Below are positions 6,999 through 62,199 of a stretch of 64,000 nt of DNA, in pieces. Position numbers and translations under genes: made by a program. The notes under the pieces are model-generated. The model saw only the letters and a program-made list of their open reading frames with translations. It made no database searches and was not told the DNA's origin. Every line of letters starts with the position of its first letter. The first letter of the stretch is position 1. The DNA is from Mobula hypostoma (Eukaryota), in assembly GCF_963921235.1 (NCBI RefSeq), contig NC_086110.1:620001-684000 (forward strand), written 5' to 3'.

Positions 6999-7319
6999 CG
7001 TGTACAATAACGTTCGTGCCATTGCCTTTGGAAATCTTTCCTGTCCAGTCTCTCACACCGCAATAAAATATTCCAGAGTCCCCGAATCTCACGTCGAAGA
7101 TATGGAATTCGGCAGAACCTTGCTCTGTAGTTATAATACTTATCCTTCTGTCTGCAGTAGGATCTATATATCCTTCTTGTCCCCCTTTCCACCAGTAAAC
7201 AGCCACCGCTGCGTTCTGAGCGAAGATTGGGTAGGTGCAGTAAATTGACACATTTGCACCCGCTGCCTTAGTCTCGTTCACAGGAATCTGGCGCACTGTG
7301 ATCGAGGCCCTGTCAGCAA
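6999..7319 (-). CDS. Gene A exon 2: V-set Ig domain with germline-joined J-like motif (VJ exon)
   Basis: 321 bp, phase 1-1, acceptor ttcattctgacag, donor gtaatt. Shows Cys(B) IYC, Trp(C) VYW, DSGIFYC and GNGTNVIV, with no stops. Confidence 0.93.
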
Positions 7320-7561
7320 CTGTCAGAATGAAAAACAATAGTTATCAGAGTATAATGGTTGGCTTTATTGACAAAAATATTAAAATAAAATATGCATATA
7401 TAATATCACTGTGACTGAAATAGATCGATTCGACTGTGAGTAAAGTAAATCAATTTAAAATACCAAAACTGCGGTTTACTTCTTGGGCAGCTGCTCGTCA
7501 CAAACAATTCCGAATATCTCGAACTCGTTATTGCAGATCAACGACGGAATTGTATACATAC

Positions 7562-7616
7562 CTGTGTACACAATCTGCAGGACGAAGAGATTAAGGAGCT
7601 TATGAAATATATGCAT
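7562..7616 (-). CDS. Gene A exon 1: signal peptide MHIFHKLLNLFVLQIVYT
   Basis: ATG plus 18 codons plus 1 nt, donor gtatgt, phase 1 matching the V exon. Same size and position as the gene B leader. Confidence 0.82.
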
Positions 7617-11689: not shown

Positions 11690-12535
11690 AACTACATAGC
11701 ATATATTGCAGGGAGACATTGATAGGATGCAGAAGCGAGCTGAGAAGTTTCAGCTGAAGTTCAATTCAGAAAAGTGTGACGTGGTACACCTTGGAAGGAC
11801 AAGCTCCAAGTCAGGGTACAATGTAAATGGCATGATACTTGGAAGTGTGAAGGAGCAGAGCGATCTGGGGGTACATGTCTACAGATTCCTGAAAGTTGCT
11901 GCACGGGTAGATAGGTAAGAAAGCTTATGGGATGTTAGGTTTCATTAGTCGAGAGATAGAGCTTAAGAATCTCGAGGTAATGATGCAACTCTATAAAACT
12001 CTGGTTTAGCCACACTTGGAGTACTCCGTCTAGTTCTGGTCGCCTCACTATAGAAAGGATCTGGTAGCATTGGAAAGGGCACAGAGGAGATTTACCAGGA
12101 TGCAGCCTGGTTTAGAGAGCATGGATTATGATCAGAGATTAAGGGAGCAAGGGCTTTACTCTTTGGAGAGAAGGAGGATGAGAGGAGACATGATAGAAGT
12201 ATACAAGATATTAAGAGGAATAGATAAAGTAGATAGACAGCGCCTCTTAGCCAGGGCACAACTGCCCAATAAAAGCGGACATGGTTTTAAACTTAAGGGT
12301 GTGAAGTTCAAGGGGGATATTAGAGGATTTTTTTTTTCACTCAGAGAGTGGTTGGTGTGTGGAATGCACTGCCTGAGTCAGTGGTGGAGGCAGATGCATT
12401 ACTTAAATTTAAGGGACTACTAGACAGATATATGGAGGAATTTAATGTGGGACTTATATAGGAGGCATGGTTTGAAGGTTGGCACAATATTGTGGGCCAA
12501 AGGGCCTGCACTCTGCTGTACTATTCTATGCTATC
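11690..12535 (+). mobile_element. CR1 LINE 3' fragment
   Basis: QGDIDRMQK.AEK.QLKFN.EKC; ERAQRRFTRM.PG...GLYSLERRRMRGDMIEVYK; ends in a tattctatg tail. Confidence 0.85.
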
Positions 12536-25959: not shown

Positions 25960-27580
25960 GGAATAGATCAGGCCGACGTATAGATGTTGTCTGAAATGTT
26001 AAGATGTAGTTTTAGGGAGCAATTGGATAGGTTGGGATTACGATGTTGAGGATGACCTTGTGGAAGTTTGTTTATGTATGAGAGGCACATGTAAGGCAGA
26101 TAGTGTTATGGTTCAGTCCATGAACTCCGGATTCCGGTTCACCGTCTGGTCCATCGTTCCTTATTCCAGATTTTCAGCTTTTCTTCTTTTTTTTTCTGTT
26201 GGGTGCTCTAATTGAGGCAGCTGATTCGCATTTTGTGCTGGCTACATAAATAGCTCCTTAATTCAGCTTCAGTTGCTGGATTGTTCCCGTTAAAACCCCC
26301 TGTCTGGATCCCTTCTCGTCCGTTCCTCCTGAAGCCTTGCCCTACAATTGGTGCCTTAAGCCTTGCTCTGCATCTAGTGTCTGTAGCCTTGCCTTGCCTC
26401 GCCTTTAAGCCCTGCCTCGCCTGCACCCTTTGTCTCGCCTGAAGCCTCGCCTGAACCACTGTCAAGTTCAACCGTTGGAGCGAGACCGGGGCCTTGCTGT
26501 GTCTGGATAAGAGACTGCCTGTCGTTGTTTGGAACTGTTTCTCTATGTCCACGCCGTCAATAGGTAGGTTCGGCCGTGTGCCGCTACCTTGTGTTAGTAG
26601 CTTTTTCTTTGCGTTCTGTGTACGACACACGGTTGTACGTTCTGCTCTCTAGGAGGGGTCTTTGCTCTGTGTAGAACCCCGGCCCCAAGTCCTGTACCCA
26701 AGGAGGGGTCCCGGCCCTGAATTCCATGTCTCTGCACTCCTGTCTCCCTCGAACGAGGCTCTGCGTTCCTGTCTCCATCGACCAAGTCAAGGCTTCGTGT
26801 TCTCGCCCTGTCCATGTGCTGCGTCCTGTGTTGGAGTTCCCTCGTCTTGTATTGGAGTTCCCTGGTCTTGCCCAGGAGTCCCTCGTTCTGTCCTGTAGCC
26901 TCGCCAAGTTCTGTCTCCCAACACCACGTAATTTCTTCGCATAGTTCCGGAGTCCGAGACCGAGTTAAGTCGCAGGTTCTGTGTCCTTGTCCGGTCTCTG
27001 GCTCGGAGTCCGAACCCAAGCCTCGAGGGACCAAAGCCATGTCCTGTCCTGCAGGCATGCCATGTCCTCGCCTACTTCCAGGGTCCGAGCCCGAGTCAAG
27101 ATCCAGTTTCTGGGTGCTTGTCCAGTCTCTCACTCGGGGTCCAGGCCCAGGCTCTTAGCTCCCAGTTCCTTGTCCTGGTCCTGCTAGCCTAGACAATGTC
27201 CTAGCCCAAGTCTTTGCTCTTGTCTCAGCTCCTAGTCTGCATCCAGTTACGTCCCTAACTCCAGCCTCTCGTCGTATCCTGTTCCTTGTACTTCAGTGTC
27301 CGTGTCTTGCATTTGGTTCTGCCTTCAACGCCCCCGTTGTGACAGATAGACAGTGTGATTTTACTACGGCTGGGGAGTCTGGAACTTGAGAACAACTGTT
27401 CTAAATGACAGGGTGATATTTAAAAGAAGAGTGTGTATTTAAGTAATAGGGTGTAGTTTATTTGGAATGAGCTGCCCGGAAGGTAATGGAGGCAGCTACA
27501 ACCAACAGTTAAAATGTATTTGAACTGGTGATTATACAGGAAAGTGTCGTGTGATGCGGGCCCAATACTGCTAATAGGGA
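25960..27580 (+). mobile_element. Decayed CR1 3' fragment interrupted by a solo LTR
   Basis: CR1-like sequence on both sides of the LTR (atgagaggca...gatag | gatagacagt...ggaatgagctgcc). Confidence 0.55.
26104..27344. mobile_element. 1.24-kb solo LTR with perfect 5-bp TSD GATAG
   Basis: TGTTATGG...GTGACA termini; GATAG at 26099-26103 and 27345-27349; internal (gcctcgcct)-type repeats shared with 18730-20100. Confidence 0.85.
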
Positions 27581-27773
27581 CTTCGTTTCTATATACTTGA
27601 TGCGCTAAATACAATCTTCTATTTAATGGTTCATTAATCTTAGCTGTTTTGTGTTGTTGGAGTTGGTGATTTCTCATTAAAATCCTATGCTTACTCCACA
27701 GTTGTTACAAAACAGTAACATAGTATGATTGATCTCGGGACACCACGATGGCCAGTAGCGTGTAATACAATCA

Positions 27774-27941
27774 TCAATGGCTATACGCTGTTCTTTTCGT
27801 TTCCAGATTTCTCGCCTCTTCCTTTATCTTTATTCCTGCATACTCGGTCTCATGAGTCTTCTGCACTCTTCTTGCGTTTTTCTGAGAAGCGGCGAGATCC
27901 ACACATGTATAAATAAGTTTATCCTCAGTTCCTTGTATGAT
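27774..27941 (-). CDS. Gene B exon 7: IIQGTEDKLIYTCVDL...HETEYAGIKIKEEARNLETKRTAYSH*
   Basis: Branch-point-like ctaac plus tattgtttccatag acceptor, phase 0; ITIM LIYTCV, ITSM TEYAGI, stop TGA at 27776-27774. Confidence 0.85.
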   Translation of the reverse strand: MIQGTEDKLIYTCVDLAASQKNARRVQKTHETEYAGIKIKEEARNLETKRTAYSH

Positions 27942-30900
27942 CTATGGAAACAATAGTTAGAGATAAGGAGCTGCTGATCCACTACTTTGGAAAAGTGATT
28001 TGTGCAGCGAACTCTGTCTTTTATCTTACCAGTGCATTAGTGAGTTCGGCTTCAGATCTGACTTTCTTGCTTTTATTATCCCTTTTAAAGTTTAGATCCG
28101 CATAAGAAGGACTGCCGGCATCTTGTCTTTCTGAAGCCTGAGAAAAACAATTTTTATACCTCAATTAACTTTGCAATTACGAACACGCTGCGCACCAGAA
28201 AACAAGATCTTTCAGAACTTCTTCGGGTCCAAGTGTGTTATATTCCTATGAAACGCATCATCAGCATGACGGAAATTGGAAAATGCAAATGCATATGGAA
28301 AAAAAAATCCAGTACGTCTGTTTTTCCAAAACAATTGGTGAGCTCGTGTGTATATATAAACTCCAGAGTCTGCTAAATCTTCCTGAAGGTCTTTTGCAGT
28401 CAAACGGGACTTTGATTTGCCTTTCTTGCAATCCTACTGGCAGTTCTCTTCCAAAGACCTCAACTTGACCTTCACCGTTCCTGTTAACAGCCATCTCTTA
28501 ATTACATTACGAATTGAGGAAACTGCTATTTAAAAACGCTTTGCTATCTTCTTATAGCCTTCTCCTGCTTTGTGGGCATCATTTATTTTAATTTTCAGAG
28601 TTTTATGTCGCTGCTTAGAGGAGCCCAAGGATGCTGATTATTGGGACAAGGTTTCAGGAGCCAAGGTATTTGTAAAGCTCTGATATTTTAATCACCTGGC
28701 CTTTCCTAACGATGATTGTAAACACGAAATACCCCTAACAGGCTAATTAAGGTCTGAAACCTTGGTAAAAGTTATCTGAGAGCTCAAGTCTCTTGGGGTG
28801 CCCGAACTTTTGCATCACGCTCCTTTCCTTTTTTTCACTCTAAAATTTTACAGAACCAAAATAATACTCTAAACTTAAAATGTTGAAAAGAAAGTTTCAT
28901 ATTTAACTTCATGACTTTCGGAGATCAGGTCATCTTCTAATCGCTTAACTATTCACAGTAACAGAAATTTTGACCAGGCGTGCCCAAACCTTTGCATGCC
29001 ACTGCACTAGCTATTGTCCTGACCTTTATTTTGTTAGTACAAATGCCCAGTTAGAAAATGACGGGAGTCAAGTCTGATTAGTTCAAAATATCAAATGCAG
29101 TATCTTGGAGAACTTAATGAGTTCCTGAATAAGAGCAGAAGACCATAAGACATAGGAGCAGAATTAAGCCACCTGGCCATTCGAGTTTGCTCTGTCATTC
29201 AACCATGCCTAATACTTTATTTTCTTCTCCTCAACTCCAGCCCCAGCCTTCTTCCCGTAAGTTTCGATGCTATGTTCAATCAAGAGCCTGTCCATCTCTG
29301 CCTTAAGTACATGACATGAATTGCCTCCACAGCGATATGTGGCAACAAATTCCACACATTCACAACTTTCGGCAAAAAAAACAAAAAAAAATCTACATCT
29401 CTGTTTTGAAAGGGCGCCCTTCTATCCTGAGTCTTTACTATCTTGTCCGACACTCTCCGACCATGGAAAACATCCTTTCCAAATCTACTCTGTCTAGGAC
29501 TTTCAACATTCAAAAGGTTTCAATGAGATCCCCCTCAGCCTTTTGAATTCCAGGAAGTGCAGACCCAGAGCCATCAAACTTTCCTCTTGTGAGACAGCTT
29601 TCATTCCTGGAATCGCCCTTGTGAAACTCCTCTGAATAAATAAATCTTTGAAGTTGCTGCACTGCATAAGCCAGAGAAACAAAACAAAAAAAATGAACCA
29701 TGCGATCCTATAACACAAGGTGTTACATGCAAAGTGACAGCCATTCCATTTCTCTAATTATGTGCTACTGATATAGGGTGTATGTGTAAAATATGTAAAC
29801 CTCTATATATGTCATAATAATATTAATCTTACCTGATTTTCCTGGTAGCGACTTAAGGTCTCATCATTTTCGGCTGCTACTAGAGGAAATAAAAAGTGAC
29901 TAATTTCATCCTCAGCGTTTGAACAGGTGCACCGAATGCGATTGCATAATCCAGAAGCAACAAGATCCGTTCGAAATCGGCCAGTGATGTAATGTCATTA
30001 TTGTCATTTTATCAAAGCACACAAATGCTGATATTACTGGTGATGAAAAATGACCTAGTGTACTGCCTAGAATTATTCAAACTCTGTGGCTTACACATGT
30101 TCTCCTGTGGCAACAAACACACTAAATTTGTAACACTTCTTGCAGAGTTAACAATACCGTTTGTAGTTGTTGCAAGATTCAGTAACATTGAGTAAAATGC
30201 GTTTTAAATCTTGTTCTGCACACAACACTCAGCTGTCAGATAGATTCTCAAGCACATCTACCTAAACCTATTTCTCCTCATGGATGCTTTACCCTTCTCA
30301 CAGCCATTTCAACTGCAATATGCTGGTGAAACTAAATATGGGCCAGGGCGATGTAACGTCTTACCTTCAGTCCTGTCTACTCTGAAACGCCTGATAAGTA
30401 ACAACAGTGCGAGGATAATGACTCCGCAGGCTGCAAGTGCACCCGTCAGGATGAAGATGAACTTGTCTCTGGTTCCTGAGGTGTGCAATAGAAGTCAAGC
30501 ATTAGCATTTTAAACAGATTAAACAATTGAATCACGTGCACCACGAACGTAAAGAAGGCGATTCGTATTTTCTTTCACAGCTTGACCTCATTGCCTTAGT
30601 AATAAATCGCAAATTTAAATAAAACGTGGATATACGTAGGACATTAATAAGTAATAATATCAACATTTAATTCCGCTTACTTTCATCAATAATTCTGTAC
30701 TGTTGAATATGTTGACAAGGCATTGATTGAAACGAGGGCTGGAAAATACACGGAAGCGATCTCAGGTCAAAGAATAAGATGGGGCAAAACAGAATTTCTA
30801 GGTAGTGTTGTGAATTGTGCCGGTAAAGTTTAGCAGATACGAGCTCTGACATAATGGACAGGCAGGCTCACATAAGGTGTAGCAGCTTGGTGTGCAGAAT

Positions 30901-33900
30901 TAGGGATTCAATATGTTGTTTTAAACCAGATGAACGGAAAATGTGCTTACGTTTATTTATAATAACATATCAGGGTAAGTTGCGAAGTTGATAAAAAAGG
31001 CTTATGCCATTCGTCTGAAGAAATATGGAATTAAAAGAAGTGAAGTCATGCTGCATTTTCATTAAACTATAGTCTGTGATATTATGATATTGTGTTCAAT
31101 TATAGTGAGATTGGGACGCGTTACAGAAGATCCAGAAAAGTCTATTTCTGTTAGAGATGAAGTCGAAAGTGCATGCATTCTTCACTTTGCTCCGTGGTGG
31201 AGGAGATAACTGAAGACCCCCACACACCGATGAAACATTTTCTTTCCATACGCAAACATTTTTGTACTACTGATTTATATATGTAACTTATGACTGCACT
31301 ATAACCTATGGTCGATTACTGCATTGTACAACTGCCAAACAACAACTCATATCAGGTCATATAATTCAGTGAATCTGATTGTGCAAAGGTAAAGTAACAT
31401 TAAAAAAGGCAAATCTGCATTGCCGATAACAGGGATTTAGAAATACTTGATATGGAAAAGTAAAGGAATTACGCCATTTTTGTTGCATATTATTCCTTGA
31501 AGCAGAAAACAGCAGCAGTATAATATGATATCTTACTCTTCTTTGTATAGCCACTGCCTTACATTTCCCTTTCCCCATTTGAATATGTTCCCTTTTTCTC
31601 TGTTTGTGAGAGATTGATAAATGCCAGACGTAAAACAAGCGTTTGAAAATATGTCTCTTACCCAATCGGATTCTATAATACTCGGATATTGGCGCCGTCA
31701 TAGATTCATGAAACACCTGGCAAGTATAAACAGACCAGCTTTCTATTACATTGAGGGAGCTTGAAACGAGATATAATCCCTCCTCGTTCTGTATTTGTGT
31801 GGTATGTATTCCAGAAGTGATTTCCATTTCATTTTTATGCCATATGAGCTCATAGTTCTTCGGGAAAAAAGCAGCAGTTGTGCACGTCAGCGCCACGGAA
31901 GGAGCGTTCTCTTCGGTGATTTTCAACGGCGCCGGCGGAACTGCAAATGATTTAAAAAAAAAAAGAGCTAGCATCTCTAAACGCACCATTATCAGAGAAA
32001 ATAATCGCTGACAGAAAATTATTCTTCACAACCTGGAATGTTAACTTGAATTTAACTGGAAAACATTAATCTCAAGTCAAGCAGGTTACGTTTATTAGCA
32101 TGAAGTTTTATGTGGCGATATACATTTTCTTTCTTTTTATTTATTTTTTCATTGACCAGAACACTGAAGTTTCAGGTGAAGATATCATGGAGAAATTATA
32201 TAAAAGCTTTCTGCGTTACCCCATGACTCCGTGACCACTATTTATTTATCTTTATTCCACATGCAAAAAGCTACAATAAGAATGGTTTGTTTTTGTTAGT
32301 TTGTTAGTTTGTTTTTGTTAGTTTAATCTAACCCTTAAATTCACATTTTATAAATTACCGGATTTACATTGTAAGAACGTTCTGCTCGTTCTGTAATGTG
32401 TTGTGCTGTAAAGCATTTTGGCTTAGGTCTTCGTAATTCTTCTAATGTTCTATATGCCGTAATTGTTATACGACAAAACAACAGAACCCCACTACCTATT
32501 GCAAAAACAAATGCATTATTTCTGCAAATACTGAATTCAGTTTGAATCCCATTATATCTTTCATCGAATTTTCATACCGATTGAAAATATATACACGTTT
32601 AGTCACGTCAATAAACTTACAGCGTCTTACATATATATAAAAAAATATAATTTGATGGTAGAGCAAACCTCTCTTAGCTAACGCATGCAATTAAATTTAT
32701 TGTGTATTTTATCGTAGTTGTGTTGTTATCAAGTGTTTATTTGCATTGTATCGGATCCTGCGTAATAATTATTTCATTCTCCTATATACCTGAGTACAGG
32801 AAATAACATGAAGCAATCTTGAATCTTGAATTTTGGACCTTCACTGCAGATACCAGTTCCAAATTTTGGATTGGTATTGGTTGCACAGAACCAATCAGGT
32901 GAACGATATTGAGTCAAAGCAAAGCGGGAAGAGTTGATAACAAAACGCAGGTTCACTATTTTTGGAGAAACTTAAGGGAAGGAGGTTTAGCACACAAGGT
33001 GATCAACACTGTCTAGTATGGTTAACTGCCAAAATCTTACAATGCAGAAGGACGTGCGAGATTTTGATTAATGACACAGTGATGCAAAATGATGCAGTGA
33101 GTAATTCATAATACAATAGATTGAGTTACTATCAAAAAACTTTTAAGTAAATAACGATCAATTAAGAATGTAATTCAACAGCAATAGTGAAACCCAGGAA
33201 GCTGTTGTGAGAACAAATCTCCTTCTTGTACAGAGTGCAAACCCTACACTAGGTTTAGTGAGAAAAAACAGATCAATTTATAAGCAGAAATAAAAATACC
33301 AGTTTAAAATCAGGAATAAGTGTTGTATCAACTGTTCTGTAACTTGCTTGATGATATGTTATTATTTAGAGAGAATGACATAAAGATATCTATCTGAAAT
33401 GACTGGAGGTGGAAATCAGTATATATGGAGAGGATATGGAACTTGTGCGTGTTGCAATGATTAGCTGAAATTAGTGCGGCACAACATCATTTTGTAAAAT
33501 CGACAGCATTGAAATGTCAACTGATCAAATTCCTGTAAGGGCAATAATTAAATCTCTCAGAATTCATCAGACATACGATTGGTTATCCAACAAGGCTCTA
33601 ATCGGTGTCGCATTAAGACTCCTAGTTCCAACATGTTTACCCTGAACAAACCTGTTTGCAATACGAAAAATAACGTATAGCGATGTGCTCTATTTTCTAC
33701 ATTAAACTGGACCAAAGCTAAACAGTAATTCGAAGTTCCATAAGGAGTGTTGACATAAACAGGACCCTAGTACCGTACGTGCCTAATCCCTCAAAGTAGT
33801 GACACAGTTGGGAAATATGACGACGACGGCAGTTTGACATTCCTGCCTGCTCTGGTCAGGAATTGGGACGTCAGGCTGAAATTGCAAAAGTCGTTGGTGA

Positions 33901-36900
33901 GAACATACTTGAGGTGTTGTCCGTGGTTCTCTTGGCCTCGCCCCAGTATAGGCGTCATTAATCTGGAATGAATGCCTGCAGCACTGGGTTTCGAGGGTTT
34001 CATTTACATGGAGAATCTACAACTCTTTGTCTGCAGAGAAAGAAGTCGAAGGGTGATCTGATAGATGCTTATGAAGTTATAAGGATCAAGATGACGTGGA
34101 TAGTCAAAGTCTTCTTCCCAGATTCTCAACGTCTGCAACTGGAGGGATGGACTTAAAATAAAAGTGCATAGGTTTAAATTGAACCTAAAAGGTTTTTTTG
34201 TCTACACACATGCCAGTAGGTACACATTATGCCATATACAAGGAAGCTGAGGAAGCGGGATAAAATGAGAATGCCAAAAAAAAACAAAAAAAAAACATTC
34301 ATACATGTGCATGAATAGAAAAAAAAATGTGCTCAAGGATATTGGGGTGTGTTCCGCATGTCAGATTTGGGTTCAGAAGTGACGGTCTAAGTTGTATAAA
34401 TCTACGACGCGTGTGAACAAAAATCAAACTAATTTTGTGCATTTTATTAACCCTACAATTTCAGCGGTTAATTAGTTTCCTGCAGTTTCTCCTGTCTGTC
34501 AACATGCAAGAAAAACAACAATTTATTTTCTAACACACTGAAAGATCATGGCCGATCTGCATTTTCACTTTCAAGTTGGAAGGTGAAATGTACCATGACT
34601 TTGCTGCCGGGGAGAAATAATTTTGTCAAATTCGCTTGGAGTGGAAATTGATTGTAGTGGGCAATGGGAAATGAACCAAAACAGAGATGTAAGAAAACGA
34701 GCCAAAATTAACCTAAGTATTATTTTATGCCGAAACCTCCTCCTTTCGCAGGCATTCTCGGGACCGTCCGTGGCAGAGTTGCTCTCCATCTAGTTATGAA
34801 GAAGAAAAAAAATATCCGATTTAAGAAGAAGCACAGGCGTTCGTGTAGCTTGGTCAGATTCAGCAACAAAAAGAAAGGAGTGATTGTAATTGGCCATTGT
34901 CCTCAGCTCCTTAAGACGGGAATCGTTTCAAAGTAAGCTTCCAGTTGTCAGTTGCCTATCACAAGAATACACTACTACATCAATACAGTTAGTGATCCAA
35001 CGGCAGCGTAGTGAGGTTGCTCCGGTGTAGGTTATTTCGCGACATTTCATGTCATTCCTTCAAAAATGCCTTGGAATCTCAGGTGTTGTAATTTATAATG
35101 TTTGGTTTTCATTATTTCCTTAATAAACTGTTTCTTCCGTCATTCATTTTGCTGCTCTCTGACAGTATGCGATTTTCCTCACCAGACGGGGTGCAGATGT
35201 AACATTCACATACAAGAACATAACTCAGTGACTACCAAAACTTTGCAACCCCTCACCAGTGGCAAAATGCTCGACCCAACGATTTTGTTGTTTCCGAGTA
35301 AATTTCTTCTTATTTAACACACAACGTTCTACCCCTGTGATCTAATTCTGTGAACCCGCTGAAAGTTCTGTGTAGCCTGAGCACAACACACCGTCACCCA
35401 CATGCTTGCTTTGTTTGAAACAAAGGGTTGCGGCAACTTTGATAGAGGCCTGAAAGATTGCGTTCTGACGAGATCTCAAAATATTTCGTGATATTTCGTC
35501 ACAACTCCAACCCAAGCCTATGTAGCTTGTAGAGCAACGGCTTCCAATTCAAGAAAAAAAAAATACCGATATCCACCCACTGCAAATAGCAAACACATCC
35601 ATCCTGGGGAATAATTCAGCGATCCTACCCGGCTGTCTGGTCTACATCCTGAATCTGTATACCTAGTTGTTCTGTGGAAGAAATTCATCAGAGCCTCTCT
35701 ATGGCTCCAGAAGTTGCCGTAACATTATATTTACGGAATAAGTAGTATTGCAGCAGGTAAAGGAATAAACAAAAAATGCTTGATGGACGCAAAGGATCGA
35801 GAGAGCAAGATTTTAGAAGTCAGCATGTCGGACCTGCTGGAATCGGGTTTAACCAGGAGAATGAAAAAGAATAAATAACAAGAGGATAATAATAAGCAGG
35901 AATTGCAGGAAACATGAAAGAATAAAGCTAAAATCTTTAATTCTCTTGTGAACAAAAGAGAATTTATAAAGCAAATTTGCCAAAGGTATTATACCATTTG
36001 CCATTATTTCAAATGAATCTGGTGAAATATTTATTTTAAAATGTCACGGATCATTGTTTGTGTAATGTTTTGGACGCTCTATTTTTTTTTTTTTTTGCTT
36101 TGTCTCAAAGGCTGCAGCAAGTTATGACAAAATGATGAAAACTCCCTGACGTTCAGAACGGAATATAAAGAAGGACTTTTTTTTCTTCTTTTTTCAGAGT
36201 AACATCGTTGAGCTCCGGGGGAAAAAAAAAACTGGAAAATAATATTGAAACAAAAAGAAAAGTACCGTCCTTTCTGGGGGGAATATAGTGCTGTAGTAAT
36301 TTTCAATCTAGCTTGATGCGGTAATGCAGACACAAGGTGAAAAGAGGCACATATTTAAATATAGGTAGCTTCCAATACATTGATGACAATGATGACCAGA
36401 AATTACGGTTTAATTGCTGAGCAAAATAAATTATAAATTTTCCAGTGACAGCTTAGAAAGGTATTTCCTCTGTCCACAGTCCATGCCCCGGATTTATCAA
36501 CAAGGACATATCATCCCAAGCAGGGTTACAACCGTTAAATATTTATGAATTCTGAATTTAACAAGTCTTTCTATTTTTACCTTCTTTGGACCCATCTTTT
36601 GATACACGTTGCATTAATTACATGTACAATGCTCAATTGTGTGATTTAATTTGTCCTGCCTTCCATCCTGAGCAAACATACTGCCATTTACTTTACCAAT
36701 CTCTGCCTCCAAGACAAACTGATATTACATGCTATACTGCATTCACCACTGAAACTCGCAAAATTTCATGAACAACAATTCCTTGTTTAATATATTTAAA
36801 TTAATAATATCACTGTTTTGCTCTTTTGCACTTTCTACTGTATAACTGAGTACTTAAGAACATAAGAAATAGGAGCAGAAGAAGGCCATCTGACCCCTCG

Positions 36901-39900
36901 AGCCTGCTCCGTCATTCAATAAGATCACGGCTGCTCTGGTCATGGACTCATCTCCATATCAACCTGCCTTTTCTCCGTAATCGTTAACTTCTGTACTATG
37001 CAAAACTTTTATCCAAACTTCTCTTAAATATGTTAACTGAGGGAGCCTCCACTGCTTCGCTGGGCAGAGAATTGCACAAATTTAGCATTCTAAACTAAGT
37101 AATAAACTATGTTTTCTTTTAATAAAACAGAGAACAAACTAGAAAACAGTCAATAACACTACGGTACTGTAAAACCGTGTAATGGTTCCTAATAGTTATT
37201 GACGGAGGAATTCATACAGTGCACGCTGCTGTGTTTTTTTTTCAGAATCAGAATGTACGACAGCAGATATGGTAGCTCACAGGACTAGAACCACAATCAG
37301 TGGAGTTTCAGGCGGCCTTAAATCACCAGGACAATACCAACACCTTGTCACGATGCTGTTTGCAGTTTATTGACTACAGTGTTTATCACCATCATTCTTA
37401 TAGTGTGATTGATAAGCTATGGGTCTCTGTACCTCACTCTGAAATTGGATTCTCGACTTGCTGACCTGAAGAAAATAATTTGTATTTATAACTCCTCCTC
37501 ACTGAGGACCAACACTGTCGCATCTCTGGAATGTGTCCTTAGCCCAATTTTCTACTCTCTCTATATCCATGGCTATGCGGCTGAGTAATAGCTAAAATGT
37601 CAACAATAAATTTGTTAATAATACAACAATTGTTGGCAGAATCTCAGATGGAAAGGGCAGGGCGTACAGCAGAGAGTGATATTAGCCAGCTGAGTGGAGT
37701 TGCAGCAACGACCTTTCACTCAACGCAGTCAGACGAGAAAGTTGACCGAGGACTTCAGAAACAGTAGGAGGATGGATCATAAAGCAATCCTCAGATTTGG
37801 AGAGAGTGGGCAATGTCAAGTTCCTGGGTGTCAATATCTCTGGGGAACTAACCTGGTCCTAACATTTCGACGTTGCTATAATGGGGGCAAGATAGCGTCT
37901 ATATTTTGTTTGATTTGAGGAGATTTGGTTTGTCACCTAAGACCCTCCAGAACTTTTAAAGATGTACCAGTAGAGCATTTTGACAGGTTGCATCACCGTC
38001 TGGCATACTGGGGAGCGACTACTGTACTGATCGAAAGAAGCTGCAGTAAGTTATATAACGAGTCAGTTCTATCATGGAGGCTAGCATCCTTCGCATCCAT
38101 GACATCTTCAAGTAGCAGTGTCTCGGGAGGGCTGCGTCCATCATTAGGGACTTCCATTACCCAGGACATTTCCACTTCTCATTCTAACCGTGAGGAAGAA
38201 GGTATAAAAGCGTGATGACGCATTTTACGATTCAAAGAAATATTTCTTCCTCTCTGCTATCCGATTTCTCATGGATAATGAACCTATGAACACTTCCGCA
38301 GTGCATCGGCACTGGACTCCAAGCCGGGTGGAACTGAGTTCAAACCCAGCCGGGTACCAGCCTGGACAGCAGCAGTATCTGCGCGGAACAAATGCCTGGC
38401 AATCTAATTCCGTATCTCGCCATGAATACGCTGTATACCCTATGGCCCACGATCTCACGAAGAGTCGAACTCGACTTAACGACTTAACGACTGAACGACA
38501 ACTTTAAATTATTTACTGATTTTATCTTTTTCCTATATTATTATGTTTTATTGTGCTTTATATTGTACTGCTGCCGGTACGTTACTAAATTTCACGACGT
38601 ATGCCGATGATTTTAATACTGATTCTGAATCTGATTAGAAGTTAATTCTGTTTAGAAGTTCTCCTTTCGCGAATTATTTAAATACACATAACAAACATTA
38701 TTCTTTTTTTTTCCATTTGCAAAGTGACAGACAGACTCGAGTTTCCAAATGAACTCTTCTCGGACTTTTCTAAGAATGGCAGAGTATGTAATATAGACAT
38801 CGGTTACAATTGATATTTGTACCCGGCTGGAAACCCGAGAAGCGGTTATTCGTTGTATATGCTGACCAAGCATTAGAACTTTTTCCAGAATCGATTTGAT
38901 ATTCTGCAGGCAATCGCTGAACTCTTAGCTTACGAAAGACACGTCATTAGCTGCAACTCACAGGTCTACAATCGGATGAAATAATTTCAGTTAACATAAC
39001 ACATGTAACATTCTATTTCAGTAATTGCCTATCTACGGACTTAACGTGCTTCATCAGATGTACATCCCATGAATTAAATCTCCAGATAAAAAAAAGGAGC
39101 ATAAAGTTATTTGAAATGAGAAAACAAAGTTCTTTCGCAGATTACACTGTTCCACCAACGGTAAAGAGTGGTTATTCAAACCCGAACGGAAGAATACTAT
39201 TGTGGGTAGAGTGGCAGTCCCTTGTTCGACTTTATCAAGATCTAACACGCTCCGCTAAGTTTAATAGTTGCATTTGTCTAAGACACACCGAGGGAGAATT
39301 ACCGTGTACAATAACGCTCGTGCCATTGCCATGGGAAAACTTTCTGGTCCAGTCACTCACACTGCAATAATAGATTCCAGAGTCTCTGAAGCTCACCCCG
39401 AGGATATGCAATTCGGCAGAACCTTGCTCTGAAGTTATAATACTCATCCTTCTCTCTGCAGTAGCATCTATAAATTGTTTTTGTTCCCCTTTCCTCCAAT
39501 AAACATCCACCAATGAGTTCTGAGCGAAGATTGGGTAGGTGCAGTAAATTGACACATTTTCTCCCTCTGTCTTCGTCACCTGCTCAGGAATCTGGTCCAC
39601 TGTGAACGAGGCCCTGTCAGCAACTGTCAGAATGAAAAATATTCCTTATCAGAGCATAATGATCGGCATCATTGACCAGAAAAAAATATATATGAACTGT
39701 CACTGTAAAGAAAAAAGGTCGAATTAATTGTGATTAAAATAAATCAATTGTAAATATCTAAACTGCGATTTACAAATTGAGCAAAACATACCTCATGAAG
39801 ATATCCCCTGTCCCCACTCCGTTAATCAGCATTTACGAGAGAAGCGTATACATACCAGTGTAAGTAATCTGCAGGACTAAGAGATACTGCAGCAGATCAA

Positions 39901-39910
39901 ATATTTGCAT
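27774..39910 (-). CDS. Gene B (7 exons, 362 aa): non-rearranging VJ-C1-TM immunoglobulin-superfamily receptor with ITIM/ITSM tail (SIRP-like or VJC1-like; orthology unresolved)
   Basis: Join 39910-39856, 39623-39303, 31940-31662, 30475-30365, 29879-29833, 28137-28030, 27941-27774 totals 1089 nt in one open frame. All introns are GT-AG with phases 1,1,1,1,0,0. Confidence 0.9.
28030..28137 (-). CDS. Gene B exon 6: ASERQDAGSPSYADLNFKRDNKSKKVRSEAELTNAL
   Basis: Acceptor ttgtttttctcag, donor gtaaga, 108 bp, phase 0-0, contains YADL. Confidence 0.85.
28200..29005 (-). mobile_element. Tc1/mariner DNA transposon 5' fragment in gene B intron 5
   Basis: Minus-strand TIR-like cagtggcatgcaaaggtttgggcac at 29005 and transposase N-terminal remnant TAKDLQEDLADSGV. 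Confidence 0.75.
29143..29735 (-). mobile_element. CR1 3' fragment in gene B intron 5
   Basis: gaccataagacataggagcagaatta tail; GLHFLEFKRLRG.LIETF; LPKVVNVWNLLP. Confidence 0.8.
29833..29879 (-). CDS. Gene B exon 5: (V)AAENDETLSRYQENQ
   Basis: Acceptor tttttatttcctctag, donor gtaaga, 47 bp, phase 1-0. Confidence 0.8.
30365..30475 (-). CDS. Gene B exon 4: transmembrane (G)TRDKFIFILTGALAACGVIILALLLLIRRFRVDRTE
   Basis: Acceptor cacacctcag, donor gtaaga, 111 bp, phase 1-1. A 23-residue uncharged hydrophobic stretch is followed by an RR stop-transfer. Confidence 0.9.
31662..31940 (-). CDS. Gene B exon 3: C1-set Ig domain
   Basis: Acceptor catttgcag, donor gtaaga, 279 bp, phase 1-1; C1 motifs LTC...FFP, LIW, GLY.VSSSL, YTCQVFH. 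Confidence 0.93.
37300..38637 (+). mobile_element. Rex1/Babar-like LINE fragment with 3' tail (duplicate of 5230-6211)
   Basis: Collinear with copy A. It retains about 200 bp of 3' UTR ending ctgattctgaatctgatt that copy A has lost. Confidence 0.75.
38301..38502 (+). mobile_element. tRNA-head/RTE-tail SINE (duplicate of 6212-6403)
   Basis: gagttcaaacc B-box; tail ctcacgaagagtcgaactcgacttaacgacttaacgactgaacgacaac. Confidence 0.65.
39303..39623 (-). CDS. Gene B exon 2: V-set Ig domain with germline-joined J-like motif
   Basis: 321 bp, phase 1-1; GENVSIYC, VYW, AELHILGVSFRDSGIYYC, GNGTSVIVH; donor gtaatt. Confidence 0.93.
39856..39910 (-). CDS. Gene B exon 1: signal peptide MQIFDLLQYLLVLQITYT
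   Basis: caaaATG start, 55 bp, donor gtatgt, homologous to the gene A leader. Confidence 0.85.
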
Positions 39911-40030
39911 TTTGAGCAGAAGCAATAAAATCGAACAGTGGTAACTGTCTGTCAGCGGCTCAGTCAAATAACACAATGAAAGGAAGCTTTAAGGGTGCCT
40001 GATGGAAAAGCTGTTGCAACTGATATATTT

Positions 40031-40046
40031 GTTTCAAATTACGTCA
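40031..40046 (-). promoter_or_regulatory. Degenerate counterpart of the gene A IRF-E/CRE block
   Basis: gtttcaaattacgtca aligns to gtttcactttgacgtca; both motifs carry substitutions. Confidence 0.25.
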
Positions 40047-41319
40047 CAGCGGCGAACAAAAAAAAAAGTTTAAAGTTGCACGCTGGCTGGACGTATCTAA
40101 TATTACAATCAAGTCAGAATTTCCACTGGCTTTCTCAGTTGTTATGAAACACATTGAGAAATGGAATCGAATGCGAGAGTAACTCAGCGGAAAGATACAC
40201 CGCTGTGGTTTCAGTGTCTTTATGAAAAACCAAAAACCCATGCAGTCACAGCATTAGAGTGAAAAGGAACAGGCAGAACAATTGAACCTATTATCTTTGC
40301 CTTCGTAGGAGTTCGCAGAAGCTTTAAATAAATAGTGTCGCATAAAGGATGAGTGCAAATGATACAGGAAAAGGAAACTCTATCAAAAACTAAGTGGAGA
40401 TATCAGTTTATAGCTTGGACGTTTGTAAAAATAACATACGATTAGATTGCAGTCTTCATAGCGAATAATGTGAAGTATTTATTAGGAGTTCCTTCATGTT
40501 CAGAATTCGAAAACTTAAAATACAGAGGCATGTTGGTAGGCGATGACCAATGGATTGGGAACTGTGCCGTCGTTGAACCGGATCCCAGGTATCTTTGTGC
40601 ACACATCCCTAAAACCACAAATAAAGTAAACGACTGCATATCTTGGGATTTTGCGGGGGCTTTAGTATGAGCGCAATATTAAAAAAAATGCCGGAATTTT
40701 CATCGGTCCTTGATCTGTATACTTGAGGTTAAATGAGCGTAGTGAATATTCACCAAACCGTTTTGCCGGGTCGTACCTGTAGACATTGGGGAGGTATGCG
40801 AAGATTAAAGATTGCACAAGAGTCAGTTAAGTATGGAATCATACAGCATCATGCAGAATCATACAGTATCATTCAGTTCGATTCTCCCACGGCGACCGAG
40901 AGGCCTCACTACTCTTGTGATTCACCTTCCAGGCCCTAACATGTTCTCTGCTATCCTCAGCTTCCTGGGACGGCAGGATAATATTCCCCAAGGTCAAATA
41001 ATAGTTATTGACATATTTAAGCGCAATACCGCACGAAACAGTGATGACTGAAATGTAGACTTTTCTGTAAAGTCTAAATACTGAAGTAAAATAGCTTGTG
41101 TAGCGGAGCTCAACACACTATAATCTTGCTAAACTGAAGATACTCCTAGATGCTTATATCAGATACGGCACAATGACTAACTTATCTTTAAAACTCGCAG
41201 CCGGTACGCTTAATATAATCACAAATGGCGCGCGATGTAGTCATGTTTATTGTTAAGCAGTAGTCCGATTGCACAGGCACACGTCTGTTACTACAGACTG
41301 TCGATATTATGATTCCAGT

Positions 41320-42059: not shown

Positions 42060-44480
42060 TCTCAGAGTAGTTAAAAGGTCGTTAGAGGTCGTCGGCTGAA
42101 ATTCCTGTACTGTGCTGTAATGCTCTCTGTTCTATAGAAGGATTGTGGGATATTACACATGCATGGGATGCTCTTCAAATCAACGCAATTAATCCGAGGA
42201 AGAATCGGAGGATAGACCAGTCTGTGTGAGAACAGTGTGGGGAATTGAATGGCTTTGTACGCCGGACAAAGCAAAGGCGGTCAGCGAAGCGGGCGCACAG
42301 TTTGCGTCCGGCCAAAAACGCAGCACCGGATGCAATAAAAAAAACCCAGCAGTTTTATCGTGTAAGACTGCTTGATCTGGAAGGATTGTTTAGGTCTTAG
42401 ATGGTAATTAAGGGAGAGTTCAGGGCAGGCGTTACACGTCTGGTAGCTACATAGCAAAGGTGGGCGTGTGGAGGGGGAGAAGTGCTGAGGGATTCTGCGG
42501 AGAATGAATACAAGAAAGCTGTAGTTGTTGGCAAGATACCAATGTGATGTCAGAAGTTGTCAATGATGATATATTGAGTCCGTAAGCTGCTGAGATGTTA
42601 GCTGAGGACGAAGGGAACTGTCCCCGATCTGAGTGCAGTTGAAGGAAATACAGTAAACACTGGTTAGGAGCGAGACACAGTTGTTGTTTTTTTTTGATAC
42701 TGTAGGATATCTTGGATGCCTTCTGGAGTAGAAATAACAATTTGGACAACAGGATATCTGGTAGAACTGAGATAAAAGACGGATGTCTTTGTGAGGGACA
42801 TGGTGGAAGATGTAGTGAACGTAGTTCTGGGAATCAGTATCGTAGTCGATGTCGCTGGAAAGCATGTCTCCTGAGGTGGAAGCATATGTCGATTGAGATC
42901 AAGAAAGGTGACAGAAGTGTTGAAATGCCTTAACTAAATTTGAGGGTGGGTAAATTGGGAAGCAAAATTGATAAAATTCAGGAGCTCATCTCAGGTGCAA
43001 AAAGAGGCATTAACACAACCAAGTGGAAGAATAGTAGAAGTGAGATAGAAACATACAAACATAGAAAATAGGTGCAGGAGTAGGCCATTCGGCCCTTCAA
43101 GCCTGCACCGCCATTTATTATGATCATGGCTGATCATCCAACTCAGAACCCAGCCTTCCCTCCATACCCCCTGACCCCTGTAGCCACAAGGGCCATATCT
43201 AACTTCCTTTTAAACATAGCTAATGAACTGGCCTCAACAGTTTGCTGTGGCAGAGAATTCCACAGATTCACCACTCTTTGTGTGAAGAAGTTTTTCCTAA
43301 CCTCGGTCCTAAAAGGCTTCCCCTCTATCCTCAAACTGTGACCCCTCGTTCCAGATCTCCCCAACATCGGGAACAATCTTCCCGCATCTAGCCTGTCCAA
43401 TCCCTTTAGGATCTTATACGTTTCAATCAGATCCCCCCTCAATCTTCTAAATTCCAACGAGTACAAGCCCAGTTCATCCAGTCTTTCTTCATATGAAAGA
43501 CCTGCCATCCCAGGAATCAATCTGGTGAACCTTCTTTGTACTCCCTCTATGGCAAAGATGTCTTTCCTCAGATTAGGGGACCAAAACTGCACACCATACT
43601 CCAGGTGTGGTCTCACCAAGGCCTTGTACAACTGCAGTAGTACCTCCTTGCTCCTGTACTCGAATCCTCTCGCTATAAATGCCAGCATACCATTCGCCTT
43701 TTTCACCGCCTGCTGTACCTGCATGCCCACTTTCAATGACTGGTGTATAATGACACCCAGGTCTCGTTGCACCTCCCCTTTTCCTAATCGGCCACCATTC
43801 ATATAATAATCTGTTTTCCTATTTTTGCCACCAAAGTGGATAACTTCACATTTATCCACATTAAATTGCATCTGCCATGAGTTTGCCCACTCACCCAACC
43901 TATCCAAGTCACCCTGCATCCTCTTAGCATCCTCCTCACTGCTAACACTGCCACCCAGCTTCGTGTCATCCGCAAACTTGGAGATGCTGCATTTAATTCC
44001 CTCATCCAAGTCATTAATATATATTGTAAACAACTGGGGTCCCAGCACTGAGCCTTGCGGTACCCCACTAGTCACCACCTGCCATTCTGAAAAGGTCCCG
44101 TTTATTCCCACTCTTTGCTTCCTGTCTGTTAACCAATTCTCCACCCACACCAATACCTTACCCCCAATACCGTGTGTTTTAAGTTTGCACACTAATCTCC
44201 TGTGTGGGACCTTGTCAAAAGCCTTTTGAAAATCCAAATATACCACATCCACTGGTTCTCCCCTATCCACTCTACTAGTTACATCCTCAAAAAATTCTAT
44301 GAGATTCGTCAGACATGATTTTCCTTTCACAAATCCATGAGATGTCAATGTAGATTGGAGTCGGGCCTGTTTCATGTCGTGAACAAAGATGCCGCCATAA
44401 ATTATTTGCGTCTGTGGCTGCAACTTTCGTTTCTAAAAATACAGGCAGCTGATGGAACGTTTTTCAGAGTAAGCACAATC
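42060..44480 (-). mobile_element. Decayed Penelope-like element interrupted by a young CR1
   Basis: Minus-strand remnants of RYID, FINFAS.F and PFLD, plus the GIY-YIG-proximal ctaaacaatccttccagatc; continuous across the CR1 insertion. Confidence 0.6.
43047..44337 (-). mobile_element. Young 5'-truncated CR1 LINE with uninterrupted RT C-terminal frame and 6-bp TSD TGAGAT
   Basis: About 400 codons without a stop ([43 protein letters not shown]). tgagat at 43041-43046 and 44338-44343. Confidence 0.95.
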
Positions 44481-62045: not shown

Positions 62046-62199
62046 GACAATATCTTTTGCGGGAGGATGCATTTTGAGGTCGATGAGCTTGCTCCGTTTT
62101 GTTCGTTTCTTTGTGCGGAAGGAGTGACTTCAGTGTAGATGTGCCTGTTCCGTTTTGTTCTGTATTTATTTTCTGCGGGAGGAGGGATTTGGAGCTTAA

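What the first reader, a model, noticed from the sequence alone, without database searches (positions are those of the whole stretch)
27774..39910. Complete non-rearranging VJ-C1 inhibitory receptor: an antigen-receptor-like ectodomain on a SIRP/PD-1-like tail, in a multigene cluster
Seen: seven exons splice into 362 aa with leader, V (GNGT J-like motif in the same exon, no RSS), C1, uncharged TM and a tyrosine-motif tail, and a diverged paralogue sits 32 kb away. Established: C1-set domains are largely confined to Ig, TCR, MHC, B2M, tapasin, SIRP and a few B7-like proteins. SIRPs pair a J-like V with C1 domains, NKp30 has a joined VJ ending in GNGT but no C1, and germline VJ-C1 genes have been proposed as relatives of the pre-RAG antigen-receptor ancestor. 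Inference: this is a lineage-expanded, diversifying inhibitory receptor family in a probable cartilaginous fish that combines NKp30-like V, a single C1 and ITIM/ITSM signalling. I cannot confirm novelty without a database search.
Basis: partly seen in the sequence, partly recalled or inferred. Interest (0 to 1): 0.9.

Follow-up and report, generated by a model that had tools for sequence, protein, structure and literature searches.

The report
Ray VJ-C1 inhibitory receptor gene
This is a real, transcribed gene of the lesser devil ray for a surface receptor with one antibody-like variable domain (V and J already joined), one constant domain and an inhibitory tail; it belongs to a large gene family that I found only in sharks, rays and chimaeras, which databases predict under inconsistent names and which no paper I could read describes.

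Summary
Seven minus-strand exons (39910-27774) with GT..AG borders splice into 362 aa: split leader, single-exon VJ domain (HGNGTSVIV, no RSS), one C1-set domain, an uncharged TM helix, and a tail with YADL, an ITIM (LIYTCV) and an ITSM (TEYAGI). Spliced contigs from three public RNA runs support all six junctions.

The window comes from Mobula hypostoma. RefSeq already predicts this gene as [quoted passage not shown] (SIRP-alpha-like); its isoform X2 is 99.7% identical to my model. A paralogous V exon lies 32 kb away and is 70% identical.

Relatives turned up only in cartilaginous fishes, many per genome, under contradictory automatic names (SIRP-alpha-like, tapasin-related-like, B7H6-like, Ig-lambda-like, CD276 homolog). 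The nearest proteins outside the group are about 18-21% identical. Human SIRP-alpha is marginally the best, followed by PD-L1, CD276, TAPBPR and the butyrophilins.

The gene fails defining tests for SIRP (one C1, not two), NKp30 (it has a C1, no charged TM and an ITIM tail) and UrIg. In white shark and catshark the family does not lie on the MHC chromosome.

Most likely it is an SHP-recruiting inhibitory receptor of a cartilaginous-fish paired-receptor family. This scan had already flagged sister genes in the same genome. Interest is moderate.

The parts
39856..39910 (-). Exon 1, coding part: ATG at 39910 and most of the leader (MQIFDLLQYLLVLQITYT), phase 1. The 5'UTR continues to at least 40067.
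   Evidence: Sequence; joint 39623|39856 and an RNA contig covering 39856-40067.
39624..39855 (-). Short (232 nt) leader intron: a 'split leader' as in antigen-receptor genes.
   Evidence: GT..AG borders; RNA joint skips exactly these bases. The split leader is described for UrIg/UrIg2 and antigen-receptor genes in PMC12227049.
39303..39623 (-). Exon 2: end of the leader plus the complete VJ domain (Cys46, Trp61, YYC105).
   Evidence: Pfam V-set E 2.5e-11; RNA contigs 39303-39507 and 39410-39624; AF2 pLDDT 85-96.
39307..39333 (-). J-like G strand HGNGTSVIV (GxGT motif, which is also an NGT glycosylation sequon), contiguous with V in the same exon.
   Evidence: The family consensus is NG(T/N)G(S/T)xLxV, with both Gly at least 90% conserved. 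No RSS.
31662..31940 (-). Exon 3: a single C1-set domain (LTC145...LIW159...YTCQVFH203).
   Evidence: Pfam C1-set E 1.7e-12; best PDB sequence matches are Ig heavy-chain constant domains and UrIg2; RNA contigs and joints.
30365..30475 (-). Exon 4: stalk, uncharged TM helix (30461-30393) and the start of the tail.
   Evidence: AF2 helix 222-255; joints 30475|31662 and 29879|30365.
29833..29879 (-). Exon 5: cytoplasmic (SRYQEN). It has a NAGNAG acceptor, tag|cag.
   Evidence: Joints. RefSeq isoform X2 lacks one residue here.
28030..28137 (-). Exon 6: cytoplasmic, with PSYADL (28110-28093), a degenerate ITIM-like YxxL.
   Evidence: Joints 27941|28030 and 28137|29833. Sharks have the canonical LSYAAL at this position.
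27774..27941 (-). Exon 7, coding part: ITIM LIYTCV (27917-27900), ITSM TEYAGI (27848-27831) with the two tyrosines 23 residues apart, and stop TGA.
   Evidence: An RNA contig runs from this exon into the 3'UTR.
26996..27773 (-). 3'UTR, with the extent taken from an RNA contig. Poly(A) signals lie at 27627 (ATTAAA) and 27462 (AATAAA).
   Evidence: X1 and X2 contigs extend about 704 nt below 27700.
7000..7616 (-). Paralogue (RefSeq LOC134356411): leader 7616-7563 and VJ exon 7323-7000. Its remaining exons lie beyond the window start.
   Evidence: tblastn shows 70% aa identity to this gene's V; the exon is 100% identical to P0157.

Best explanation
This is an intact, spliced and transcribed Mobula hypostoma gene for a type I membrane receptor. 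It belongs to a multigene family that I found only in cartilaginous fishes. The ectodomain is a germline-joined VJ domain that cannot rearrange, mounted on one C1-set domain.

The V domain is the likely ligand-binding face, and it is the domain that differs most between neighbouring paralogues. The ligand is unknown.

The proposed mechanism is inferred, not shown. On engagement, Src-family kinases would phosphorylate the tail tyrosines. The ITIM (LIYTCV) and ITSM (TEYAGI) tyrosines are 23 residues apart, a spacing that would suit the tandem SH2 domains of SHP-1/SHP-2, as in PD-1 and SIRP-alpha. Recruiting these phosphatases would damp activation of the cell that carries the receptor.

Sister genes encode nearly the same ectodomain on a tail-less TM segment, so the family probably works as paired inhibitory and non-inhibitory receptors. 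Skipping of the phase-1 Ig exons yields forms without V or without C1.
For: - Gene structure and splicing: (all six junctions seen in RNA contigs).
- Domains: (V-set, C1-set); AF2 ectodomain pLDDT above 85, TM helix, disordered tail.
- Canonical ITIM and ITSM, uncharged TM.
- No RSS.
- Identity to RefSeq: 99.7% to M. hypostoma P0154, with a 1:1 orthologue in M. birostris (P0153, 89%).
- Family spread: the V-C1 architecture and the tail motifs are conserved from chimaera to rays, and all 30 relatives I looked up by name are cartilaginous fishes.
- Short-tail sister form: P0158.
- Isoforms: RefSeq isoforms without C1 (P0157, P0001, P0006) and an RNA contig that joins the leader directly to C1.
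- Tandem family members beside the window.
Against: - There are no functional data. SHP binding, surface expression and the ligand are all inferred.
- The runs are labelled 'RNA?', their tissue is unknown, and depth is low (about 5-45).
- The leader is only moderately hydrophobic, and no signal-peptide predictor was available.
- The first tail motif in rays (PSYADL) is not a canonical ITIM, and rays have lost the TVYAQT tyrosine found in sharks.
- B7-like ligands with V-C ectodomains score almost as well as receptors in fold searches.
Confidence: 0.75

Rival explanations
1. It is the ray representative of the SIRP lineage (a SIRP-alpha co-orthologue, possibly CD47-binding) that lost one C1 domain and then expanded.
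For: - RefSeq's own name for it.
- The language-model look-alikes of the whole protein are SIRP-alpha clusters, score 0.96.
- Human SIRP-alpha is the top Swiss-Prot fold hit, E 1.3e-18.
- Both have a VJ-type V, C1-set domains and a multi-tyrosine tail. From memory, the shark/chimaera tail pattern (YAxL, TxYAQT, LTYAxL, TEYAEI at spacings of about 23/14/23) resembles SIRP-alpha's ITYADL, TEYASI, LTYADL, SEYASV.
Against: - Identity is only 18%, and PD-L1 (4e-18), CD276 and TAPBPR score almost the same.
- The ectodomain alone and the tail alone are not SIRP-like in the atlas searches.
- It has one C1, not two.
- A tail-only search found only cartilaginous-fish proteins.
- A 2026 survey places the SIRP family at Tetrapoda (PMC13262535).
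- There are many fast-diverging paralogues rather than one conserved gene.
- Synteny and CD47 were not tested.
Confidence: 0.25
2. It belongs to the shark NCR3 (NKp30) family described by Kinlein et al. 2021.
For: - A single-exon VJ ending in GNGT, which from memory is like NKp30.
- Isoforms without C1 give an NKp30-like V-TM protein.
- The shark NCR3 family is reported as highly divergent, with eight subtypes (from memory; the paper could not be read).
Against: - The main isoform has a C1 domain, an uncharged TM and an ITIM/ITSM tail.
- Shark and sawfish NCR3 genes are MHC-linked. This family sits on a 193.5 Mb white-shark record and a 198.8 Mb catshark record, whereas the last listed genes on their MHC chromosomes end at about 116 Mb and about 163 Mb.
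- NKp30 is not among the 60 best solved matches to the V domain.
Confidence: 0.08
3. It is a B7/butyrophilin/B7H6-like ligand rather than a receptor.
For: - A V-C two-domain ectodomain.
- RefSeq names some relatives 'NCR3 ligand 1-like' and 'CD276 homolog'.
- Fold hits to PD-L1, CD276, butyrophilins and B7H6 fall at E 1e-14 to 1e-18, and the overall geometry fits butyrophilins better than bent Ig light chains (TM 0.45-0.50 against 0.24).
Against: - The V domain carries a conserved GxG(T/S) J-motif, which published lists assign to VJ-type receptors: CD79, NITR, SIRP, CD8, NKp30, PRARP (PMC11599192).
- Pfam prefers C1-set (1.7e-12) to CD80-like C2-set_2 (6e-7).
- It has a canonical ITIM + ITSM pair, and sister genes form a paired-receptor arrangement.
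Confidence: 0.08
4. It is a direct relic of the pre-RAG VJ-C1 antigen-receptor precursor, closer to Ig/TCR/UrIg than to any innate receptor family.
For: - It has exactly the architecture of one TCR or IgL chain (split leader, VJ, one C1, TM).
- The best solved sequence matches to the whole protein are Ig heavy chains across V-CH1, and UrIg2 scores E 2.3e-13. The best PDB fold matches are Ig light chains.
- The literature predicts VJC1-type precursors (PMC10751288).
Against: - There is no phylogenetic test.
- PDB content is dominated by antibodies, so these rankings are biased.
- The family is not on the MHC chromosome in two sharks. It could not be placed on the antigen-receptor complex either; linkage was not determined.
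- The family is young and dynamic at its tips.
Confidence: 0.12

Closest known systems
SIRP-alpha / SIRP family (mammals, birds)
   Same: A VJ-type V domain, C1-set constant domain(s), an uncharged TM, a multi-tyrosine SHP-recruiting tail, and paired inhibitory and short-tail family members. It is the best Swiss-Prot fold hit and the best language-model look-alike.
   Different: One C1 instead of two. Identity is about 18%. I found the family only in cartilaginous fishes, with many paralogues. No orthology or CD47 link has been shown, and SIRP is placed at Tetrapoda in PMC13262535.
NKp30 / NCR3
   Same: A non-rearranging single-exon VJ with a GNGT-type G strand. The isoforms without C1 are V-TM proteins.
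   Different: NKp30 has no C domain, carries a charged TM residue, is activating and is MHC-linked. This gene has a C1, an uncharged TM and an ITIM/ITSM tail, and the family is off the MHC chromosome in two sharks.
UrIg / UrIg2 (elasmobranch non-rearranging 'antibodies', PMC12227049)
   Same: Found in elasmobranchs, a germline VJ in one exon, a split leader, C1-type constant domains. UrIg2 (PDB 9dmx) is among the best solved sequence matches.
   Different: UrIg has 3 C domains and is secreted. UrIg2 has 9-11 C domains. Neither is reported with an inhibitory tail. They are linked to the MHC and to the Ig/TCR complex respectively.
PRARP (Fu et al. 2019; chicken and other non-mammalian vertebrates)
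   Same: [quoted passage not shown]
   Different: My searches found no bony-vertebrate relatives.
PD-1 (tail only)
   Same: An ITIM followed about 23-25 residues later by a TEYAxI ITSM (PD-1 details from memory).
   Different: PD-1 has a lone V domain without a C1. No sequence relationship was shown.
B7H6, CD276, butyrophilins, TAPBPR
   Same: A V + C(1-like) ectodomain. Fold E-values are similar, and RefSeq borrows these names for family members.
   Different: Published lists of joined-VJ genes do not include them, and they have different tails or roles (ligands, chaperone).

Membership tests
SIRP family | N-terminal V-set domain with a J-like GxG G strand | tested here: met
   V-set E 2.5e-11; HGNGTSVIV in the same exon.
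SIRP family | Two membrane-proximal C1-set domains (V-C1-C1) | tested here: not met
   There is one C1 exon. RNA joins V to C1 and C1 to TM directly, and tblastn finds no other Ig exon in the introns.
SIRP family | Sequence or phylogenetic grouping with SIRP to the exclusion of other V-C1 proteins | tested here: inconclusive
   SIRP-alpha is the top hit, but at 18% identity and level with PD-L1 and CD276. It is absent from the 60 best PDB sequence matches. No tree with SIRP sequences was possible.
SIRP family | Tail tyrosines bind SHP-1/2; the V domain binds CD47 | not testable with these tools
   Only the motifs can be seen.
NKp30 / NCR3 | A single VJ domain with no constant domain | tested here: not met
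   The C1 exon is present and spliced in. Forms without C1 exist only as isoforms of relatives.
NKp30 / NCR3 | A basic TM residue for CD3-zeta/FcR-gamma pairing and a short tail | tested here: not met
   The TM is uncharged, and the tail runs 116 residues past the TM segment and carries an ITIM and an ITSM.
NKp30 / NCR3 | MHC linkage (sharks, sawfish) | tested here: inconclusive
   By record length the family is not on the MHC chromosome in white shark or catshark. It was not determined for M. hypostoma.
UrIg / UrIg2 | A VJ followed by three or more C1-type domains | tested here: not met
   There is one C1.
Rearranging Ig/TCR | Separate V and J segments flanked by RSS | tested here: not met
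   V and J are contiguous in one exon, and there are 0 RSS-like sites.
ITIM/ITSM inhibitory IgSF receptors (functional class) | (I/V/L/S)xYxx(L/V/I) and TxYxx(V/I) motifs in the tail of an uncharged-TM type I protein | tested here: met
   LIYTCV and TEYAGI with tyrosines 23 residues apart. The motifs are conserved across the family.
B7 / butyrophilin | A V domain without a J motif plus a CD80-like C domain | tested here: not met
   The GxG(T/S) motif is conserved, and C1-set outscores C2-set_2.
PRARP | Sequence relationship to chicken PRARP genes | not tested

The most novel reading that the evidence does not exclude
The family would be an undescribed, surviving lineage of non-rearranging VJ-C1-TM chains dating from the base of jawed vertebrates. 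On this reading it is either the cartilaginous-fish counterpart of the SIRP/PRARP-type genes or a closer relative of the gene that RAG invaded. Its members include inhibitory forms and TCR-chain-like forms; the latter have a membrane-proximal Cys, an Arg at the start of the TM and no tail. It would give a living model of how a germline V-C1 receptor signalled before rearrangement arose.
Probability: 0.12. Interest if true: 0.85.

Novelty: new variant of a known kind. Interest (0 to 1): 0.5.

Why it matters
Single-exon VJ genes are actively sought as clues to how antibodies and T-cell receptors arose (PMC12227049, PMC10751288). This family has the exact layout of one TCR or light chain (split leader, VJ, one C1, TM), fixed in the germline and wired to inhibitory signalling. 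It is abundant in the oldest living jawed vertebrates.

It is currently hidden under five or more contradictory automatic names, which will mislead comparative studies of SIRP, tapasin, B7H6 and Ig light chains. Defining it properly would give shark and ray immunology a candidate paired-receptor (NK/myeloid-type) system. It would also add a further group to V and C1 phylogenies of antigen-receptor origins.

Tried and rejected
- My first V-exon acceptor (39599, giving 354 aa) was wrong. RNA shows 39623 is used.
- The PDB search with a V-domain family profile was swamped by multi-Ig proteins such as titin, Robo and pIgR, so it said nothing about NKp30 or SIRP.
- The word-indexed profile search and the tail-only search returned only cartilaginous-fish proteins. 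Homology of the tail to SIRP-alpha therefore remains a resemblance recalled from memory.
- The atlas searches on the ectodomain alone and the tail alone were not SIRP-specific. The tail looked only weakly (0.80) like small leukocyte adaptors: C1orf162, LST1, SIT.
- The look-up of encoding contigs gave neither DNA nor coordinates for this assembly, so synteny could not be examined.
- Accessions and gene names of family members do not occur in the MHC-paralogon supplements.
- These papers were not held: PRARP (Fu 2019), UrIg 2023, Flajnik 2012, Ohta & Flajnik 2015 and Kinlein 2021.
- Positive selection on V is not significant: dN/dS 1.68, p = 0.24. dS (0.10) is below the roughly 21% divergence of the 1.2-kb alignment that spans the exon and its flanks, so gene conversion is an alternative explanation.
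- No tandem repeats of note.
Full report
OBSERVATION

The gene lies on the minus strand. Reading the sequence and locating the exon borders by script gives seven exons:
- e1 39910-39856
- e2 39623-39303
- e3 31940-31662
- e4 30475-30365
- e5 29879-29833
- e6 28137-28030
- e7 27941-27774

Every intron is GT..AG, and the phases are 1,1,1,1,0,0. The product is 362 aa. My first choice of V-exon acceptor (39599) gave 354 aa.

RNA EVIDENCE

Three public runs of one study hold parts of the locus. They are coded X1-X3, labelled 'RNA?', and kept as Logan contigs. Laid on 27700-33699 and 34300-40299, their contigs carry the following:
- Joints 27941|28030, 28137|29833, 29879|30365, 30475|31662 and 39623|39856. 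All read CT..AC on the + strand, which is GT..AG on the gene strand.
- Loose ends at 39303 reading AACGGCGCCGGCGGAA, the reverse complement of the first bases of the C1 exon. This is the V-to-C1 junction, which spans a 7.4-kb intron too long to fit in one call.

So all six predicted junctions are seen. Exons have word depth of about 5-45. Introns are near zero except over transposon-like repeats. Contigs extend the 5'UTR to at least 40067 and the 3'UTR to about 26996.

One X3 contig joins the leader (39856) straight to C1 (31940). That is an in-frame isoform without V.

DOMAINS

- The V exon scores as V-set (E 2.5e-11) and the next exon as C1-set (E 1.7e-12, against 6e-7 for CD80-like C2-set_2).
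- The best solved sequence matches to V are pIgR domain 1, shark VNAR and TCR V-alpha.
- The best matches to C1 are Ig heavy-chain constant domains and UrIg2.
- The G strand HGNGTSVIV is a J-like GxGT motif inside the V exon.
- A scan for heptamer/12-or-23/nonamer signals over 27000-41000 found none, against 0.16 expected. The gene therefore cannot rearrange.
- The TM segment is uncharged.
- The tail holds SRYQEN, PSYADL, LIYTCV (a canonical ITIM) and TEYAGI (a canonical ITSM). The ITIM and ITSM tyrosines are 23 residues apart.
- An AlphaFold2 model built on a 20-member family alignment gives two confident beta-sandwich domains (pLDDT 85-96), a TM helix (222-255) and a disordered tail.

IDENTITY OF THE GENOME AND THE GENE

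An exhaustive HMMER search with the V exon, followed by name look-ups, led to RefSeq proteins of manta and devil rays.

The 362-aa model is 99.7% identical to P0154 of Mobula hypostoma, named 'tyrosine-protein phosphatase non-receptor type substrate 1-like isoform X2'. The only difference is one residue at the NAGNAG acceptor of exon 5.

The second V exon in the window (7323-7000, with its leader at 7616-7563) is 100% identical to LOC134356411 isoform X2 (P0157). It is 70% identical to this gene's V.

So the gene model is already public as an automatic prediction. What is missing is any characterisation.

THE FAMILY

Thirty relatives were looked up by name, and all are cartilaginous fishes. 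They come from Mobula, Hemitrygon, Hypanus, Amblyraja, Heterodontus, Scyliorhinus, Mustelus, Cetorhinus, Carcharodon, Heptranchias, Chiloscyllium, Hemiscyllium and the chimaera Callorhinchus. Each species has several members on one chromosome record.

A profile search added more members from the same groups and none from bony vertebrates. In the AlphaFold cluster library, the only strong hit is an unnamed Ig-like protein at 27% identity, E 4e-24. I did not confirm its organism, though from its accession series I believe it is a bamboo-shark entry. The next hits drop to E 1e-16 at 15-21% identity.

The automatic names contradict each other: SIRP-alpha-like, tapasin-related-like, NCR3 ligand 1-like, Ig lambda-1-like and CD276 homolog.

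The family alignment conserves these features:
- the V hallmarks
- the NG(T/N)G(S/T)xLxV J-motif
- the C1 hallmarks (LxCxTxxFxP...W, YTCxVxH)
- a tail pattern of YAxL, TVYAQT, LTYAxL and TEYAEI; rays have lost the second tyrosine

A maximum-likelihood tree of 47 ectodomains shows the following:
- This gene's subfamily is elasmobranch-wide (support 100/100).
- It contains a ray-specific clade (100/100).
- This gene has a one-to-one orthologue in M. birostris.
- The duplication that separates it from the neighbouring paralogue type predates the Mobula species split.
- Several deeper subfamilies are shared by sharks and rays.

Some members have a different C-terminus. P0158, for example, has a membrane-proximal Cys, an Arg at the start of the TM and no tail. 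That points to paired inhibitory and non-inhibitory receptors.

Earlier notes of this scan place further family genes 12 kb and 39 kb before the window and 88 kb after it. Others lie 12-13 Mb away and on other chromosomes. The scan has therefore found this family before on other DNA of the same genome.

DIVERSIFICATION

Between this gene and the neighbouring paralogue type, V is about 70% identical, C1 87% and the tail 83-88%.

For the two V exons in the window, 32 of the 37 differing codons change the amino acid, and dN/dS is 1.68. With only 6.5 synonymous changes this is not significant (Fisher p = 0.24). dS (0.10) is lower than the roughly 21% divergence of the 1.2-kb alignment that spans the exon and its flanks. 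Diversifying selection is plausible but not shown.

COMPARISON WITH KNOWN FAMILIES

SIRP:
- The whole protein's nearest language-model look-alikes are SIRP-alpha clusters, score 0.96.
- Human SIRP-alpha is the top Swiss-Prot fold hit (E 1.3e-18). But identity is 18%, and PD-L1, CD276, TAPBPR, butyrophilins, B7H6, TCR-beta and Ig-lambda follow within three to four orders of magnitude.
- The ectodomain alone and the tail alone are not SIRP-specific.
- A tail-only search found only cartilaginous-fish proteins.
- The gene has one C1 where SIRPs have two.
- A 2026 survey dates the SIRP family to Tetrapoda.

NKp30:
- The only shared features are the joined VJ and the GNGT motif.
- The C1 domain, the uncharged TM and the ITIM/ITSM tail all fail NKp30's definition.
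- Shark and sawfish NCR3 genes lie in the MHC. This family's white-shark record is 193.5 Mb and its catshark record 198.8 Mb. The last listed genes on their MHC chromosomes end at about 116 Mb and about 163 Mb.

UrIg and UrIg2:
- They share the germline VJ, the split leader and the C1-type domains.
- They have 3 and 9-11 C domains respectively, and neither is reported with an inhibitory tail.

MECHANISM

Shown:
- The gene is intact, spliced and transcribed.
- It encodes V, C1, a TM segment and a tyrosine-motif tail.
- It belongs to an expanded, clustered family in cartilaginous fishes.

Inferred:
- It is a surface receptor whose V domain binds an unknown ligand.
- Its phosphorylated ITIM and ITSM recruit SHP-1/SHP-2 to inhibit the cell, by analogy with PD-1 and SIRP-alpha.
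- It works alongside tail-less sisters as a paired system.
- Exon skipping modulates the ectodomain.

VERDICT

Novelty is limited. RefSeq predicts the gene, the scan has followed up sister genes, and the general kind is known (a VJ-type V plus C1 on an inhibitory tail, as in SIRP). The single-C1 family found only in cartilaginous fishes appears undescribed in the literature I could read.

Its bearing on antigen-receptor origins is open. It needs proper V and C1 phylogenies and synteny analysis.

Noticed in passing
window 39856 joined to 31940 (run X3 contig, 171 nt): A transcript contig splices the leader exon directly to the C1 exon and skips the V exon. The result stays in frame because both exons are phase 1, giving a leader-C1-TM-tail isoform without V.
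   Followed up: partly
window 29876-29879: The exon 5 acceptor is a NAGNAG (tag|cag). The RNA contigs use the upstream site (362 aa), while RefSeq isoform X2 uses the downstream one (361 aa).
   Followed up: yes
window 7000-7616 (minus strand): The leader and VJ exon of the neighbouring paralogue LOC134356411. Its RefSeq isoform X2 (P0157) joins V directly to the TM and tail with no C1, giving an NKp30/PD-1-like layout. Relatives in M. birostris, Heterodontus and Scyliorhinus have similar isoforms without C1.
   Followed up: partly
outside the window: P0158/P0159 (LOC134356409, same chromosome): A sister gene with a near-identical V-C1 ends in ...NLCRILLGLLVITVGIALIVNYLQSF: a membrane-proximal Cys, an Arg at the start of the TM and no cytoplasmic tail. 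Shark members have TM segments ending in D/E-H. These may be activating or adaptor-pairing partners. From memory, the TM start resembles that of TCR-alpha.
   Followed up: no
M. birostris proteins P0001, P0153, P0002: All three carry the same TM and cytoplasmic tail although their V domains differ. This could be gene conversion between neighbours or a chimeric automatic gene model.
   Followed up: no
window 28300-29700 (intron 5) and 36700-38100 (intron 2): Intronic repeats have RNA word depths in the hundreds to thousands, far above the exons. They look like abundantly transcribed transposon families. Tool-listed 'joints' inside them are repeat artefacts.
   Followed up: no
window 43143-44423 (minus strand) and other ORFs (3510-4007, 12070-12423, 14105-14506, 58981-60256, 62099-62530): A 426-aa ORF that looks like a reverse transcriptase, plus several similar fragments. 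By eye they resemble LINE-type retrotransposon debris; no domain search was run on them. No other cellular gene was evident in the window.
   Followed up: no
window 39903-39910: The start codon lies within ATGCAAAT, the Ig octamer sequence. This is probably coincidence: the 5'UTR starts at least 157 nt upstream, and the motif is not kept in the paralogue (MHIF...).
   Followed up: partly
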